DNA of 63,346 nucleotides, the filler included, from Octopus bimaculoides (taxonomy: Eukaryota): assembly GCF_001194135.2 (NCBI RefSeq). It is 7 parts of 7 records of this genome, joined end to end, with 100 filler letters (N's around TTAATTAATTAA, not from the genome) between each part and the next. Parts side by side here need not be neighbours in the genome. Positions count along the whole stretch, not along the records: positions 45,363 to 51,745 come from NC_069000.1; 6 more parts are not named here. One strand, 5' to 3'. Shown here one piece after another: positions 45,138-51,745 of this stretch (position 1 is the first letter of the stretch; each line of letters opens with the position of its first letter). The translations under genes were made by a program, and so were the position numbers. Under the pieces are notes generated by a model. That model was not told where the DNA came from and did no database searches. It saw only the letters and a program-made list of their open reading frames with translations.

Positions 45138-45824
45138 GTAAGTTTGTCACAAATTATGTTCAATATATGACTTTCGTTAAGGCAGCAAGCTGGCAGAATC
45201 GTTAGCACACCGGGTGAAATGTTTAGTGGGATTTGATTTGTCTTTACATTCTGTGTTCAAATNNNNNNNNNNNNNNNNNNNNNNNNNNNNNNNNNNNNNN
45301 NNNNNNTTAATTAATTAANNNNNNNNNNNNNNNNNNNNNNNNNNNNNNNNNNNNNNNNNNNNATATACACATATATATATATATTTATAGAGAGAGAAAG
45401 AGAGAGAGAGAGAGAGAGTTAAAGGTTTAGATCGCCTTCGGTCATGAATGACCATGGGATTGCTCCTAGAAAGTTGCCCTCCCTGGTTCAAGTCCGGGCA
45501 AGGCTTATTTATGGAAGACCAGCAGTCGCCCATGCATACTGGCCTCCCCTCTCCCCACCACTGATGTTATCCAAGGGAAAGGCAAAGGGGCCGATACAGA
45601 TTGGCACCTGTGACGTTGCAACTCATTTCTGCATCTGAGTGAATTGGAGCAACGTGAAATAAAGTGTCTTGCTCAAGAACACTACACGCAGCCCGGTACG
45701 GGAATCGAACTCACTACCTCATGGTTGTGAGACCAACGGTCTAATCACTGAGCTATATGCCTTCATACATACATACAATCATACATACATACACACACGG
45801 ATATGTATGTGTGCGCGCGCGTGC

Positions 45825-46310
45825 AGGTCTGCTGAAAAGTTCATCGTCTGGCTAAGATACTCTTATGGAATGTGACCAAATGAGGTTTTATTTTTCACCA
45901 TAGTCCTCCTTGCGGCCCACACACTTCTTCAATCGGTGTTGCAGTTCCTGGATCCCATTAGTGAAGAGGTCTTCATCCTGCTGGTCAAAGAAGTCCTCCA
46001 CTGCGGATATGACGTCATCACCACTGCGATACTACTTCCTAGCCAAGTGTTCTTTTTTTTTTTTAACATTGTGGAACAGATGGTGGACAGATGGTTCAAC
46101 ACCAGGAAAATAGGCAGGATGATTAAGCGGTTCAATGCCACAGTCACGCAATGTCACAGTCACGCAATGCCACAATCGGCCATTGAAACCAAGGACTTGT
46201 ACGCTGGAGAATTGTCCTAATGAAACAAGATCCCTTTCGTCAGTTTTCCAAGGCATTTGGTCTTGATGGCTTTCGTAACTGTCTCAGTAAGTTGGCATAG
46301 TACTATAGGA
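45825..46310 (-). mobile_element. Mariner transposase C-terminal remnant
   Basis: HPAYFPGVEPSVHHLF (cf. HPPYSPDLAPSD); DDVISAVEDFFDQQDEDLFTNGIQELQHRLKKCV. Confidence 0.78.
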
Positions 46311-46477
46311 AAGTGGTTATACACCATTAGGTGTACACCTGCTTTCCTATATTAAATTCGGAATAAACGGAACGCAGAACTCCGAACTAACAACACAACA
46401 ATATTTACTTAAGGAGGTAAATAGGCATCTTTAATCTTGGTTGCTGTCTCCTTGCTTTTGGAGAATTATTTCTTGCA

Positions 46478-46649
46478 ATTCTGTATTTAAGAGACGAGGA
46501 ATTATGAACATTATTTACATTTGACGGATATTTGTCCTCATCTTGTTTGTTGTTAACACAACGTTTCGGCTGATATACCCTCCAGCCTTCATCAGGTGTC
46601 TTGGGGGAAATTTCGAACCTGGGTTCTTATTCCTAAGGTATTTTTTCGA

Positions 46650-46697
<48 letters not shown>
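46478..46697 (-). mobile_element. Hammerhead-bearing Penelope-associated repeat, head missing
   Basis: Near-identical body to 36513-36765, ending in (ATT)n on the + strand. Confidence 0.75.
46555..46600 (-). ncRNA. Minimal type I hammerhead ribozyme (dimer-type)
   Basis: GACAC-CTGATGA-A-GGCTG gagggtatat CAGCC-GAAA-CG-TT-GTGTT: 5-bp stem I, 5-bp stem II, palindromic AACGTT in place of stem III, GUU cleavage triplet. Confidence 0.75.
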
Positions 46698-46700
<3 letters not shown>

Positions 46701-47230
46701 CGTTTCTGTAGCTCTGTCACACTGAATTATTTCCATAGACGCTTTGCAGTCACGTGGTTTCGGGTTCAGTAACACTGCGCAGTACCTTGGGCAGCTATTG
46801 TCTGTGTTTGTCCCCCCAAACATCACTTGACAACTGATGCTGGTGTGTTTACGTCCCCGTAACTTAGCGGTTCGGCAAAAGAGACCGATAGAATAAGTAC
46901 TAGGCTCACAAAGAATAAGTCCTGGGGTCGATTTGCTCGACTAAAAGGCGGTGCTCCAGCATGGCCGCAGTCAAATGGCTGAAACAAATAAAAGAGTCAA
47001 AGAGTAATCTGGTCTTTTTAAGACAATAGTGTATGATATGGAGTGAGATTTAACTGCTGTTTCTAGCAGGTCGAACAAACACGTAGACGCACTTTCGTTG
47101 GCTGAGAGGTAGAAGGGGTCGTGTCGATGGTGATGATACTTGTAGTGGTTACGGTAGTGGTGATTAAACATAATAAAAGTAACAATTAAAACCGAAACTG
47201 AAGGTATTTCCTTGTTCTTTTAATAACCAT

Positions 47231-47311
47231 CCAATCGGCTACCGCCACGTCATCATTCGGCTCCCACCCATCCTTATATTATACCGCACGGACTTCCCTT
47301 CCAATCACAAG
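47231..47311 (+). promoter_or_regulatory. GMDS proximal promoter
   Basis: CCAAT boxes at 47231 and 47301; CCACGTCA (ATF/CREB-like) at 47245-47252; YY1-like CAAGATGGC overlapping the ATG; local GC enrichment. Confidence 0.55.
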
Positions 47312-47377
47312 ATGGCTGCCACCGGTGCTGATACATCAAACCGTAAGGTTGCTCTAATAACTGGTATTACAGGACAG
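47312..47377 (+). CDS. GMDS: GDP-mannose 4,6-dehydratase, exon 1
   Basis: MAATGADTSNRKVALITGITGQ|GTAAAT; diagnostic N-terminal Rossmann motif VALITGITGQ; the expected continuation (DGSYLAE) was not found in the window. Confidence 0.88.
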
Positions 47378-49814
47378 GTAAATCAGATCGTGGCTTTTGT
47401 TTATATTTTTTCTCATACTTTCTAATTTCCCCTCATGTTACTTTAGTTTCTATTCGTGTTCATTTACAAATGCATATTAAGTGCAATTTTACTATTTTGC
47501 CTATCCGTATCTTATTCAACCGGTGTACCTCGGAGCGGCGTGTGTACACATATACATCAATCATTATATATATATATATATAGTAAGTTTTAAATATATA
47601 TATATATATATATATATGGCGATCTTTCGCGTATATATATATAAAGAGCATCATATATGTTTATATGCGTGTTAATATTTGAGTGTATTTAACTATGTGT
47701 GTGACAAGCACTTTGATTCGGACCCATGTCACTGACTGGTGGAGTTTAATTGTTATCTTATAATATCGTGACGTTAACCTCTTACGAAAATAATCGCACT
47801 TGCTTGTGTATACGGTGTGTGTACGCGTGCGCTTATATGTGTGTATATCTGTCGTGTTTTGTGTACGTACGTTGGTGTATGTTTCACATACATGTATGAA
47901 CACGCGTAGACACGCCTGCATTTAGGTAAATTTTCTACGTTGAAGCAATTCAATAGCCACGTTGCATGTTTGTACAGTTGTTTAAATGTTTAACTCCTTC
48001 ACCCCTCAACTTGTCGGCTTCTCTTTAATACTACCGTCACCACAGAGAGAAGGACTCCTTGACAAAGAAAATGAAAACGGGGAAAGGCTGCGTGATCGTG
48101 GTTGGTACACCTTTCAACATAGCTCTGCTTGATCAAGGCTTATTCGGGGTATAAACAGCAACATAATTATTGCCATCATCATTATCGATGTACTGCGTAT
48201 ATTTTATACAAATACCTATATTCTGTTTTATTTCACGTAACATTTCTTCACATTTCACAAAGACAATAATGAAGCAGTTGTTGTTTCGCCCCAGGTCAGT
48301 CCTAATCGAGGAAGACTGTTTCCAACTACGACCATTCATTCCGTCTTTTCCTTAAAGATTATCGCCTAATGCTCAGAAGGCAGCGTGTGATTTGGCTACT
48401 ATTTCCAGCAGATACTGTTGACTAATAACCAGTTTGAGTTGAAACCTTGTGAATGTATTTTATATACTACAACACTGAGATCTGTCGATAAAATTTATAC
48501 CAGTTTTATACAAGGACAGAATTAATTTCTATCTTTACAAAAATTTGCTGTATGTATGTATGTATGTATGTATGTATGTCAGCCGCTTTCTGTTTGTGAT
48601 CCTGTGTTAATTTTTCAGCGATATGATCTTACGAATTCCAGTTTCGATACTTGGTGGGGGACACTTGATGAAAGCATGAATGTCACAACCTCCCGTAGTT
48701 CTGCCCTATAAATTAGAAATTTCGTTCATGAGTTGTCCATACCTCACCTACACTCTCGAAATGTCTAAACGCGTTACATCTGGAACAACAACAACAAAAA
48801 AAAAGTTGAATGGATCTATGATGGAATGTATTCCAGAAGTTACCTCATCCATTTCATTCAAACATATCAAATGTTTTTTTGTTTTTTTTAAAGACTGTAT
48901 GTTGTGATTTGAGTGAGATTTGGTTGCTATTTCTAGTCAGACAAGCAACGTGTTGTTGCCCTTATGTTAGGAGTTGTGATACTTGTTACTTTCAATCAAG
49001 TATCCCAAAGTAATTCGAGGAACTTTTTCAGTGTTATTTTCTTCATTACTTCATTTTTACCGCTTTTCCGCCCCCGTTGTGTGTTTAGTATGCGCAAAAC
49101 GCATGTATCTTCATGAAAGGAAACATCTACACACAGCAATAAAAACAGTGTCCCCACTCCCCCCGAGTTAGCCCCTAATCTAGCCGACCTATGGTTAAAA
49201 GCATTCCAACCTCGACCGTTGTCCAATTTGTTAAAGACTCTAGGGTGTTACTCCACGGAGATTTGGCTGCTATTTCTAACACTTTGAGACTTCATCATTG
49301 GTTGCAAGTAATTCAGGAAAAAGAGGTTAACAAAAAATCATCTGTAACGTTGTCGATGTTCGTGGCGATATTGTTTCAGCCATCTCATCTAATTTTTTCG
49401 TTTGTTTATATAGACTTAAATGTATCTAGGACCTCATTACATTATCCAGCATATCTTCCATTATTTAAGACGATATCTGATTGTTATCTCTTGCGGAGCA
49501 AATGAACTCGTGGTGGTGGTGTCATCGTTGCAATCGAGTAAAATGGGTTTGCTTTGTGACGACGTGTTTATTTTAACCTTTGTTTAGTTTTGTCTGACGT
49601 GGACATAATGGGCATTCGTATTGGGTGTGTATGTCTAACAACCTACTTCTCTTTCTACCTTTTATACCCACCTAAAATAACTACCAGCTCAAGAGACACA
49701 CCTAATTGGCAGTCCTGTAGACTTGTGTATGACCTGAGTGTCACTAGTTATAGACATACAAATACCTGTATACATACACGTATAAGTATATAACGTATAT
49801 ATCCTCCTCCTCTT

Positions 49815-50057
49815 CCTCATCATCATCGTTTAACGTCCGTTTTCCATGCTGGCATGGGTTGAACGGTTCGACTGGGTTCTGGGAAAGCCAGGAGGCTGCA
49901 CCAGGCTCCAATCTGATCTGGCAGTGTTTCTACAGATGGACGCCCTTCCTAACGCCAACCACTCCGAGAGTGTAGTGGGTGCTTTTTACGTGCCACCGGC
50001 ACGGAAGCCAGTTAAGGTGGCGCTAGCATCGGCCACGTTCGGATGGTGCTTTTTACC

Positions 50058-50060
<3 letters not shown>
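49815..50060 (-). mobile_element. SINE with RTE-type (GAT)n tail (others at about 8335-8400, 35320-35520, 44262-44500, 51000-51440, 63235-63290)
   Basis: CATCATCATCGTTTAACGTCCGTTTTCCATGCTGGCATGGGTTG on the + strand. Confidence 0.8.
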
Positions 50061-50102
<42 letters not shown>

Positions 50103-50260
50103 NNNNNNNNNNNNNNNNNNNNNNNNNNNNNNNNNNNNNNNNNNNNNNNNNNNNNNNNNNNNNNNNNNNNNNNNNNNNNNNNNNNNNNNNNNNNNNNNNN
50201 NNNNNNNNNNNNNNNNNNNNNNNNNNNNNNNNNNNNNNNNNNNNNNNNNNNNNNNNNNNN

Positions 50261-50294
<34 letters not shown>

Positions 50295-50341
50295 TCTATA
50301 CACGCTCGTGTCTAAGAATATATTGTGGTGACACAGAAAAG

Positions 50342-50458
50342 GTGCCGGTGACGTCTGAAGGGCACCCGTGCTGGTGACGCGTGAAGGGCACTCGTGCCGG
50401 TGACGCGTGAAGGTCACCCGTGCCAGTGACGCGTGAAGGGCACCCGTGCCAGTGACAC
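50342..50458. repeat. 26-bp GC-rich minisatellite, about 4.5 units
   Basis: GTGCC(G/A)GTGACGCGTGAAGGGCACCC repeated; the unit resembles an internal segment of the RTE-tailed SINE. Confidence 0.85.
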
Positions 50459-51437
50459 TTCAGAGACATGCAGTACACTCTCTAGAGGTTAGGATGTTAG
50501 GCTCACGATAGTAAGGTCACAAGTTCGATTTCCGGTGGTGTGTTGTATCCACGAGAAAGACACTGTATTTCACATAGTTACAGGTTACTCAATTAGTGAG
50601 AATGTATTGTATCTGCAATTTAAAGGGCCAACCTTGTCACATTCTCTGTCATGCATCTAGCAGCTCACCTGCAACAGACTGCCATCTTGTTCTGGCAGGG
50701 TACCTATATGCCTATGAAACCGGGAAACCGGCCCTGATAAACCAGGCATGGCTTGAGAAGGAACGAACAACAACAACAACAGCAACAACATTGTTGAGAT
50801 GAATTAAATTGTTACACTGCATAAAGACAAGACCTTTGCACTGAACCAGAAAATGCAGAAAGAAAGAGATTTAGTGTGGAACAAGCTGTAGCTGTATGGT
50901 TAAGAAGCTTCTTTTCCAGCCTTGTGGTTTTAGTTTTACTGTGCAGTGCCTTGGGCAAGTGTCTTCTGTAGTTGCCTCAGGCTGACCAATGTCTTGTGAG
51001 TGAAATTGGTCAAGTGGTGCTGGTGTCACATAAAACGTACCCAGTACACTCTGTAAAGTGGTTGGTGATGGTGTTAGGAAGAGCATCTGGCTGTAAAAAC
51101 CAGGCCAAAGCAGACAGCGGAGGTTGGTGTGGTCCTTAGGCTTACTGGCTCCTGTCAAACTGTTCAATGGAAGACGGATGTTAAATGATGAAGATGATGT
51201 TAAGACAGATGTTAAATGATGTGAAAGCCTTGTGTGGGTGTGTGTGGAGAGTGAGAGAGAGAGAGAGAGAGAAGCACCGAGTACACCCTGTCAAGTAGTT
51301 GGTGTTAGGGAGGGCATCCAGCCATAGAAACCATGTCAAAGCTGACATTGGAGTTTGATGTAACCTTGTGGTTCACTGCATCCTGTCAAACTATTCAACT
51401 AATACCAGCATGGAAAGCAGAAGTTAAATGATGATGA

Positions 51438-51470
<33 letters not shown>

Positions 51471-51712
51471 TGTTGCTATTATGTTAAACTGTCGTGTGTC
51501 CAAATTTGGCCAAATGCATTTTTTCAGTACTTATTTTTGCTTGCAATAGCCAGTTCTTTTGGTCAAACTGTCGTGCTCCAGCTGCTTCAGATACCAAAAT
51601 ATCAAAAATAATCAAAGTGTAGTACAACAGTTTTGCTATGGAATGGTGGAACTATCTTTCGTTTTGTGAAAAAGCAATGTTTTTGACTTATGACACTTTT
51701 GCATAATAGCAA

Positions 51713-51745
<33 letters not shown>

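What the first reader, a model, noticed from the sequence alone, without database searches (positions are those of the whole stretch)
46555..46600. Intact minimal hammerhead ribozyme about 700 bp upstream of the GMDS start codon
All core nucleotides are present (CUGAUGA, GAAA, GUU), with perfect stems I and II. Stem III is replaced by the palindrome AACGUU. Established: minimal PLE-associated type I hammerheads of this kind cleave as dimers. It lies on the strand of any divergent upstream transcript from the GMDS promoter, so it could end or process such RNAs (inference).
Basis: partly seen in the sequence, partly recalled or inferred. Interest (0 to 1): 0.7.

Follow-up and report, generated by a model that had tools for sequence, protein, structure and literature searches.

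The report
Lone Penelope-type minimal hammerhead ribozyme motif
A complete hammerhead ribozyme motif without a stem III lies 712 bp upstream of a GMDS-like first exon; it is the usual footprint of Penelope-like retrotransposons in invertebrate genomes, here a single copy among other transposon debris, and nothing found here suggests it serves the gene.

Summary
On the minus strand, 46600..46555 reads 5'-GACAC|CUGAUGA|A|GGCUGG-AGGGUAUA-UCAGCC|GAAA|CG|UU^GUGUU. Every hammerhead core nucleotide is present. Helix I has 4 Watson-Crick pairs plus a G-U. Helix II has 5 plus a G-U. There is no stem III, only the palindrome ACGU.

A 22-nt pattern taken from the motif found at least 120 metagenome contigs, but none in 596 Gb of prokaryotic genomes or in viral contigs. 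Those hits fall into families with covarying helices. Thirty carry PLE reverse transcriptase/GIY-YIG coding sequence, usually ending about 50 nt upstream on the same strand. A covariance model built from them scores the window motif 47.6 bits, inside the family range.

The window holds no second copy, no PLE coding remnant and no tandem repeat. The neighbours are a mariner remnant, SINE-like sequence and a microsatellite.

Verdict: a solo PLE-derived minimal hammerhead. Published tests found such motifs inactive as monomers. The proposed role in processing divergent GMDS transcripts has no support. This is a known kind and of low interest.

The parts
46596..46600 (-). Helix I, 5' strand (GACAC, positions 2.5-2.1)
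   Evidence: Pairs with GUGUU at 46559-46555: 4 Watson-Crick pairs + 1 G-U. The covariance model alignment shows no non-standard pair.
46589..46595 (-). Core box C3-A9 (CUGAUGA)
   Evidence: The only CTGATGA on either strand of the piece.
46588..46588 (-). Unpaired A between A9 and G10.1
   Evidence: Read from the sequence. A hallmark of PLE minimal hammerheads (PMC4209133).
46568..46587 (-). Helix II hairpin (GGCUGG / UCAGCC, 8-nt loop AGGGUAUA), starting with G10.1-C11.1
   Evidence: 5 Watson-Crick pairs + 1 G-U. Within the family range of 3-8 pairs and 3-13 nt loops.
46564..46567 (-). Core box G12 A13 A14 A15.1 (GAAA)
46561..46564 (-). Palindrome ACGU (A15.1 C15.2 G16.2 U16.1), standing in for helix III. 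It can pair only with the same tetramer of a second copy.
   Evidence: Read from the sequence. The double-hammerhead fold evaluates to -24.3 kcal/mol.
46559..46560 (-). Predicted cleavage site: after U17 (46560), before G1.1 (46559). The triplet is GUU.
   Evidence: Standard hammerhead numbering applied to the sequence. Cleavage itself was not tested.
46555..46559 (-). Helix I, 3' strand (GUGUU, positions 1.1-1.5)
46303..46651 (-). AT-rich non-coding segment that carries the motif. It lies between the mariner remnant and the (TTA)n microsatellite. The retroelement fragment is somewhere inside it; its ends are not defined.
   Evidence: No similarity to anything else in the piece or to the metagenome families beyond the ribozyme. 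No protein-family match. In other families the element ends about 50-80 nt 3' of the ribozyme.

Best explanation
The motif is the ribozyme of a Penelope-like retroelement (PLE). It was left here by the insertion of a 5'-truncated PLE copy or of a PLE-dependent non-coding derivative.

In PLE RNAs this minimal type I hammerhead lies in the 3' untranslated region and pseudo-LTR. It has no stem III of its own. Two copies pair through the palindrome ACGU, and each 5' strand of helix I pairs with the 3' strand of the other copy. This forms a double hammerhead that cuts after U17.

At this locus there is one copy only. An RNA made from the minus strand could be cut only by pairing in trans with a transcript of a same-family copy. 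Most likely the motif is inert here and has no role for the GMDS-like gene.

Shown: the motif, its class hallmarks, the existence of the class elsewhere and its link to PLEs, and the absence of a partner in the piece. Inferred: the insertion history, the dimer mechanism at this locus, and the lack of host function.
For: 1. All core nucleotides and both helices are present.

2. Four hallmarks published for PLE minimal hammerheads are present: helix I of 4-5 bp, an unpaired nucleotide between 9 and 10.1, G10.1-C11.1, and palindromic 15.2/16.2 (PMC4209133). The first three are not needed for a bare core match.

It found 0 in 596 Gb of prokaryotic genomes and 0 in viral contigs.

4. The hits form many families whose helices covary. 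In an alignment limited to variants with at least 3 helix I pairs, 85% of cells were paired against 63% in shuffles (0 of 500 shuffles as high), and 8 of 11 pairs changed on both sides. Among all 71 variants, helix I had at least 3 pairs in 68%, against 18% when flanks were re-paired.

5. Thirty of the 120 loci carry PLE protein similarity. In 21 an ORF lies upstream on the same strand and ends 46-311 nt before the ribozyme, about 50 nt in most. The L014 ORF has RVT_1 (7e-10) and GIY-YIG (3.5e-6), though there the ORF ends 1,484 nt upstream.

6. A covariance model built from 34 of these sequences scores the window motif 47.6 bits over its full length. The family range is about 30-64 bits.

7. 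Families end sharply about 50-80 nt 3' of the ribozyme and have variable 5' extents, as 5'-truncated retroelement copies do. About 80% of loci show a single copy. The literature likewise says most motifs are solo remnants.

8. The double-hammerhead fold is feasible. It evaluates to -24.3 kcal/mol, against -27.2 for two monomers at their minimum free energy (MFE). The gap to the MFE is smaller than the family median.
Against: - No PLE coding remnant adjoins the motif in the window.
- The flanks resemble none of the metagenome families.
- I could not show that the motif belongs to a multi-copy family in its own genome, because that genome could not be reached.
- The 22 fixed bases of the search pattern were taken from the motif itself, so the model score and E-value are partly circular. 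Only helix I and the distal part of helix II are independent tests.
- Rfam's hammerhead models do not match the motif. They also miss seven other loci of the class, at least four of which carry PLE coding similarity.
- Catalysis was not tested. The GUU triplet and a 4-bp intermolecular helix III suggest at best weak activity.
Confidence: 0.8

Rival explanations
1. Exapted ribozyme. The motif cuts or terminates upstream antisense transcripts that start at the GMDS promoter, and so shapes divergent transcription.
For: The strand and distance fit: minus strand, 712 bp upstream of the ATG. The core is fully intact while the neighbouring mariner is badly decayed. There is precedent: a few hammerheads conserved in amniotes are thought to act in mRNA biogenesis (PMC7229834).
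Against: The class is inactive as a monomer and weak even as a dimer in vitro (PMC4209133). No partner copy lies within the piece. In the double hammerhead, helix I forms between the two molecules, so a trans partner must share ACAC/GUGU. An intact core is equally explained by a recent insertion. No transcription or conservation data could be obtained.
Confidence: 0.04
2. Chance match. An AT-rich intergenic sequence happens to satisfy a short descriptor.
For: A relaxed descriptor is expected about 23 times in an assumed 2.7-Gb genome. The monomer fold is no more stable than shuffled sequence (z = -0.59). No Rfam hit.
Against: Expected 5e-5 times in this piece even with the relaxed descriptor. 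A descriptor as strict as the motif gave 0 of 400,000 simulated contexts. The motif also carries the bulged nucleotide, G10.1-C11.1 and a palindromic 15.2/16.2, and it equals in 22 fixed positions a family abundant in animal-derived contigs and absent from 596 Gb of prokaryotic DNA. The Rfam and fold-stability negatives apply to other members of the class too.
Confidence: 0.03
3. Unit of an active non-LTR retrozyme: a tandem repeat with type I hammerheads that makes small circular RNAs.
For: Animal retrozymes carry type I hammerheads with short palindromic helix III. They are proposed to derive from PLE pseudo-LTRs (10.64898/2026.07.22.740005; PMC7229834).
Against: No tandem repeat with a 150-400 bp period lies around the motif. 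There is no second hammerhead. Helix I is open, with no loop 1 to make the loop 1-loop 2 contacts of canonical retrozyme ribozymes. A solo, dead monomer of such an element cannot be told apart from a truncated PLE here, and is included in the best explanation.
Confidence: 0.05

Closest known systems
Minimal type I hammerheads of Penelope-like elements (Cervera & de la Pena 2014, PMC4209133; Lunse, Weinberg & Breaker 2017, not readable here)
   Same: Same core. Helix I of 4-5 bp. An unpaired nucleotide between A9 and G10.1. G10.1-C11.1. Helix II longer than the canonical 4 bp. No loop 3 and palindromic 15.2/16.2. Solo occurrence, like most genomic copies.
   Different: No PLE ORF or pseudo-LTR is recognisable at this locus, and membership of a same-genome family was not shown. 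Helix II (6 pairs) is at the short end of the 7-8 bp described for Schistosoma families.
PLE-linked hammerheads recovered here from metagenome contigs (L001-L120; for example L011 and L043, with PLE reverse transcriptase/GIY-YIG-like ORFs just upstream)
   Same: Identical in 22 positions (CUGAUGA-A-GGC ... GCC-GAAACGUU). Same architecture. The model score lies within their range.
   Different: Helix I, the distal part of helix II, the loop and all flanking sequence differ. About 20% of those loci have a second, mostly inverted, copy within 700 bp. This one has none.
Canonical type I hammerheads of animal satellite and retrozyme repeats (newt satellite 2, Schistosoma Sm-alpha, coral, mussel and axolotl retrozymes; Rfam Hammerhead_1)
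   Same: Type I topology, short palindromic helix III, and dimer-dependent cleavage in several cases.
   Different: Those have a closed helix I with loop 1-loop 2 tertiary contacts, a 4-bp helix II and tandem genomic arrays. None of these is present here.
CChMVd (+) hammerhead with an extra A between A9 and G10.1 (De la Pena & Flores 2001, cited in PMC4209133)
   Same: The extra unpaired nucleotide at the same core position, known to be compatible with catalysis.
   Different: That is a viroid type III ribozyme with a stable helix III. It is not a genomic retroelement motif.
Conserved intronic hammerheads of amniotes (HH9/HH10)
   Same: A precedent for a retroelement-type hammerhead taken over by a host gene.
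   Different: Those are canonical, active as monomers and deeply conserved. None of this has been shown here.

Membership tests
Hammerhead ribozyme (general) | Conserved core: C3 U4 G5 A6 N7 G8 A9, G12 A13 A14, A15.1-U16.1, and H17 at the cleavage site | tested here: met
   CUGAUGA at 46595-46589, GAAA at 46567-46564, U16.1 at 46561, U17 at 46560.
Hammerhead ribozyme (general) | Three helices around the core within one molecule | tested here: not met
   Helices I and II are present. Helix III would be A15.1-U16.1 closing a 2-nt CG loop, which cannot form in a monomer.
Hammerhead ribozyme (general) | Site-specific self-cleavage | not testable with these tools
   Needs in vitro transcription of monomer and dimer constructs.
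Rfam hammerhead families (Hammerhead_1, _3, _II, HH9, HH10) | Match to a curated covariance model | tested here: not met
   No hammerhead hit at E <= 10 in the piece or in a 121-nt stretch. Control: seven loci of the same class, at least four with PLE coding similarity, also give no hammerhead hit. The models do not cover this class.
PLE minimal type I hammerhead | Short open helix I (4-5 bp) | tested here: met
   GACAC/GUGUU, 4 Watson-Crick pairs + 1 G-U.
PLE minimal type I hammerhead | [quoted passage not shown] | tested here: met
   A at 46588 (criterion from PMC4209133).
PLE minimal type I hammerhead | G10.1-C11.1 pair and a helix II longer than the canonical 4 bp | tested here: met
   G at 46587 with C at 46568. 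Six pairs in all.
PLE minimal type I hammerhead | Palindromic 15.2/16.2 with no or minimal loop 3, allowing a double hammerhead | tested here: met
   ACGU at 46564-46561. The double-hammerhead structure is nested and evaluates to -24.3 kcal/mol.
PLE minimal type I hammerhead | Scores as a member against a model built from PLE-linked copies | tested here: met
   47.6 bits, full length, E about 1e-12 in the piece. Family range about 30-64 bits. Caveat: the 22 fixed model positions came from a pattern taken from this motif.
PLE minimal type I hammerhead | Lies in the pseudo-LTR or 3' UTR of a PLE, next to a reverse transcriptase plus GIY-YIG ORF | tested here: not met
   No PLE coding similarity in the piece (tblastn E > 0.1; Pfam). 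This is also true of 90 of the 120 related loci and of most published copies, so it does not exclude a truncated copy.
PLE minimal type I hammerhead | Belongs to a multi-copy consensus family within its own genome | not testable with these tools
Three protein searches and two exact look-ups gave nothing from it.
Non-LTR retrozyme | Tandem repeats of about 150-400 bp, each with a type I hammerhead | tested here: not met
   Tandem Repeats Finder shows only microsatellites and a 26-bp minisatellite elsewhere. The piece has a single hammerhead.

The most novel reading that the evidence does not exclude
A solo PLE-derived minimal hammerhead has been taken over as a cis element of a bidirectional promoter. 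Minus-strand upstream transcripts of the GMDS-like gene are cut at 46560|46559 after pairing in trans with abundant same-family PLE transcripts. This would tie promoter-upstream RNA turnover to retroelement expression.
Probability: 0.03. Interest if true: 0.6.

Novelty: new member of a known kind. Interest (0 to 1): 0.15.

Why it matters
It matters little on its own. Minimal hammerheads of Penelope-like elements occur by the thousand in many invertebrate genomes, and most are solo remnants, so one more copy near a housekeeping gene is expected.

Two points are of practical use:
- Rfam's hammerhead models miss this whole class, so standard non-coding RNA annotation under-reports it.
- A simple 22-nt pattern separates animal-derived contigs (at least 120 hits) from 596 Gb of prokaryotic DNA (0 hits). 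It could flag host contamination or PLE content in metagenomes.

Only if the motif proved conserved and cleaved at this promoter would it become an interesting case of ribozyme exaptation.

Tried and rejected
1. Rfam scans of the piece and of a 121-nt stretch gave no hammerhead. A control on related loci of the same class gave the same blank, so this result says nothing either way.

2. The monomer fold is no more stable than shuffled sequence. This is expected for a dimer-dependent motif.

3. I looked for other genomic copies by searching a chimeric three-frame translation of 46330-46650 against the protein collection. No hit.

4. I tried to reach the orthologous locus with the exon 1 peptide extended by conserved GMDS residues. 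The result was only short GMDS fragments from unrelated organisms. This search was poorly designed, because short hits outrank full-length proteins.

5. I tried to reach the source genome through the mariner remnant. Only fish SETMAR-like and anonymous proteins came back.

6. Exact look-ups of two window ORFs found nothing on record.

7. Pfam on the three minus-strand frames around the motif found nothing relevant (one search failed on stop codons).

8. BLAST of the motif's flanks against the 120 related loci matched only the microsatellite and the ribozyme itself.

9. A tRNA scan followed up a B-box-like GGTTCGAAA just 5' of the motif. It found no tRNA, so the idea of a SINE-type promoter was not pursued.

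10. The paper by Lunse et al. on dimer cleavage and the supplements of the 2014 paper are not held.

11. My first dimer evaluation used a non-nested topology and returned a meaningless energy. It was corrected.

Full report
**What is in the sequence.** The piece (45363-51745) is eukaryotic in character. It is AT-rich and full of microsatellites, and it has one assembly gap. On the minus strand, 46601..46554 reads A-GACAC-CUGAUGA-A-GGCUGG-AGGGUAUA-UCAGCC-GAAA-CG-U-U-GUGUU-A. In hammerhead numbering:

| Element | Window position |
|---|---|
| C3-A9 | 46595-46589 |
| Extra unpaired A | 46588 |
| G10.1 / C11.1 | 46587 / 46568 |
| G12-A15.1 | 46567-46564 |
| C15.2 / G16.2 | 46563 / 46562 |
| U16.1 / U17 | 46561 / 46560 |
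| G1.1 | 46559 |

Helix I (GACAC/GUGUU) has 4 Watson-Crick pairs and a G-U. Helix II has 5 Watson-Crick pairs and a G-U around an 8-nt loop. There is no stem III. A15.1-U16.1 would close a 2-nt loop, which is impossible in a monomer. The tetramer ACGU is self-complementary. The finding's coordinates (46555-46600) are exactly the two ends of helix I. The ATG of a GMDS-like first exon (MAATGADTSNRKVALITGITGQ, followed by a GT donor) is at 47312, 712 bp away on the plus strand. Only this exon is in the piece, so the gene's identity is plausible rather than proven.

**Is it more than chance?** It is the only CTGATGA on either strand of the piece. I simulated contexts with the piece's dinucleotide statistics. 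A relaxed minimal-hammerhead descriptor (helices of at least 4 pairs with G-U allowed, an optional inserted base, a palindrome of 0-6 nt) is expected 5e-5 times in the piece and about 23 times in an assumed 2.7-Gb genome. A descriptor as strict as the observed motif gave no hit in 400,000 simulated contexts. Chance is very unlikely for this piece, but the motif alone would not be decisive on a genome scale. I therefore looked for independent evidence.

**The hallmarks of a known class.** Cervera and de la Pena (PMC4209133) described minimal hammerheads in the pseudo-LTRs of Penelope-like elements (PLEs). They listed features that emerged without being part of their search descriptor:
- a conserved G10.1-C11.1 pair;
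- palindromic 15.2-16.2.

They also described a short helix I (4-5 bp) and a longer helix II. The window motif has all of these. They report that most genomic copies are single elements, probably from truncated PLEs. A single motif showed no detectable cleavage, and dimers and trimers cleaved only weakly. A later review says the same (PMC6765202).

**Relatives elsewhere.** The source genome could not be reached. I therefore scanned public contigs for CTGATGAAGGC-N(8-18)-GCCGAAACGTT, 22 fixed bases taken from the motif.
- 596 Gb of bacterial and archaeal genomes gave none, where my own estimate of the chance expectation for 22 fixed bases is about one.
- Viral contigs gave none.

The hits fall into many sequence families in which both helices covary. 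Helix I appears as UCCC/GGGA, UACCA/UGGUA, GCAC/GUGC and UACG/CGUA, among others. Among 71 distinct variants, helix I has at least 3 consecutive pairs in 68%, against 18% when 5' and 3' flanks are re-paired at random. I then aligned 34 variants, chosen for having at least 3 helix I pairs, so those three pairs are complete by construction. In that alignment 85% of cells pair, against 63% in shuffles (0 of 500 as high), and 8 of 11 pairs change on both sides. Sliding the partners by one column drops pairing to about 40%.

**The link to PLEs.** Thirty of the 120 loci show protein similarity to PLE ORFs. In 21 an ORF lies upstream of the ribozyme on the same strand and ends 46-311 nt before it, about 50 nt in most. 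The 477-aa ORF of L014 has RVT_1 (E 7e-10) followed by GIY-YIG (3.5e-6), which is the canonical PLE architecture, although in L014 it ends 1,484 nt upstream of the ribozyme. The L011 ORF, 53 nt upstream of its ribozyme, has a sub-threshold GIY-YIG match.

Within the three largest families, similarity ends sharply about 50-80 nt 3' of the ribozyme, while the 5' extent varies. That is the pattern of 5'-truncated retroelement copies. One family shows an optional extension of about 35 nt, like the 'tail' described for PLEs (PMC8557442). About one locus in five has a second, mostly inverted, copy within 700 bp, as the literature also describes.

**Scoring the window motif.** A covariance model built from the 34 sequences scores the window motif 47.6 bits over its full length, with no non-standard pair (E about 1e-12). 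The next best match in the piece scores 6.9 bits. Family members score roughly 30-64 bits. The fixed positions make this score partly circular. The independent parts are helix I and the distal three pairs of helix II, both formed in the window motif, and the fact that the class exists at all.

Rfam's hammerhead models do not match the motif. They also miss seven other loci of the class, at least four of which carry PLE coding similarity. That negative therefore carries no weight.

**How it would work.** In the double hammerhead, the ACGU of two copies forms a 4-bp helix III, and the 5' strand of helix I in each copy pairs with the 3' strand of the other. For two copies of the window RNA this structure evaluates to -24.3 kcal/mol. 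Two monomers at their minimum free energy give -27.2, and the dimer minimum is -31.2. The gaps (2.9 and 6.9 kcal/mol) are smaller than the family medians of 4.5 and 12.1. The motif is thus as competent as its relatives. The active fold is not the favoured one, which fits the weak in vitro activity reported for the class.

**The local context.** In order along the plus strand:
- a tRNA-like SINE head (about 45693-45762, minus strand, recognised by eye);
- a decayed, 5'-truncated mariner transposase remnant, with protein homology from about 45895 to 46302 on the minus strand;
- the roughly 350-bp segment with the ribozyme;
- (TTA)15 at 46652-46697;
- SINE-like sequence;
- the GMDS-like exon.

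The piece has no PLE coding remnant, no second core even with relaxed rules, and no tandem repeat of retrozyme size.

**Verdict.** The functional inference is not. A lone copy of a dimer-dependent, weakly active ribozyme sitting in transposon debris is most simply a relic. A trans partner would have to share its helix I. I could not test transcription or conservation, so exaptation is not excluded; I give it about 3-4%. The thing is a further member of a well-described kind, and interest is low.

Noticed in passing
window 45826-46302 (minus strand): Decayed mariner-type transposase remnant, C-terminal half only, with stops and frameshifts. Protein homology runs from about 45895 to 46302; the left end at about 45826, a possible terminal inverted repeat, was judged by eye only. 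A conceptual translation is 61% identical to a fish SETMAR-like protein, and homology to a fuller mariner protein (P0127) starts abruptly at YYANLLRQLRK (46302).
   Followed up: partly
window 45693-45762 (minus strand): tRNA-like SINE head. By eye, the reverse complement reads GGCATATAGCTCAGTGATTAGA...GAGTTCGATTCCCGTACC, with A-box and B-box-like sequences. ARAGORN and Rfam do not call it a tRNA.
   Followed up: partly
window 46652-46697: A perfect (TTA)15 microsatellite lies 51 nt from the 5' side of the ribozyme (in minus-strand orientation). PLEs are reported to favour microsatellite targets (PMC8557442), but I could not test whether this one was the insertion target.
   Followed up: no
window 46603-46620 (minus strand): A B-box-like GGTTCGAAA lies just 5' of the ribozyme. 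This recalls SINE-like hammerhead elements with Pol III promoters (Schistosoma Sm-alpha), but no tRNA-like fold was detected.
   Followed up: partly
window 51069-51167, 51300-51398; 49818-49885 with 51372-51439: Two direct copies (75% identical) and one inverted pair (78% complementary) of an interspersed repeat inside the first intron of the GMDS-like gene. Probably SINEs.
   Followed up: no
window 50342-50456: A GC-rich 26-bp minisatellite (GTGCCGGTGACGCGTGAAGGGCACCC, 4.4 copies, 89% matches) in an otherwise AT-rich intron.
   Followed up: no
window 50103-50260: An assembly gap of 158 N sits between two (AT)n runs. The long 'inverted repeats' reported there are an artefact of (AT)n and the N run.
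   Followed up: yes
L029, L012, L082, L034, L058, L050, L056, L071 and others: Head-to-head inverted pairs of minimal hammerheads 40-700 bp apart in metagenome-derived PLE copies. This matches the inverted 5'-truncated copies described for PLE insertions.
   Followed up: partly
L016, L024, L028, L029, L043, L052 (about 70-105 nt after the ribozyme): In one PLE family, some copies carry an extra segment of about 35 nt (aatcaaccacctggttacaggaccatttttaaaa) after the common 3' end. This resembles the 30-40 bp 'tail' reported for PLEs.
   Followed up: partly
L037 (14.8 kb held of a 42-kb contig, GC-rich, densely coding): The one pattern hit in a bacterial-looking contig matches only the core part of the model (24.7 bits, positions 7-39) and has no helix I. 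It is probably a chance match.
   Followed up: partly
L002, L003, L022, L025 and others (family AGUC/GAUA): An abundant family of 17 loci, of which only L071 shows PLE coding similarity, and that on the opposite strand. About 85 nt of conserved sequence lies upstream, including what by eye is the reverse complement of a tRNA D-arm-like sequence (gctaccagttgagccac). It may be a non-autonomous, PLE-dependent element.
   Followed up: no
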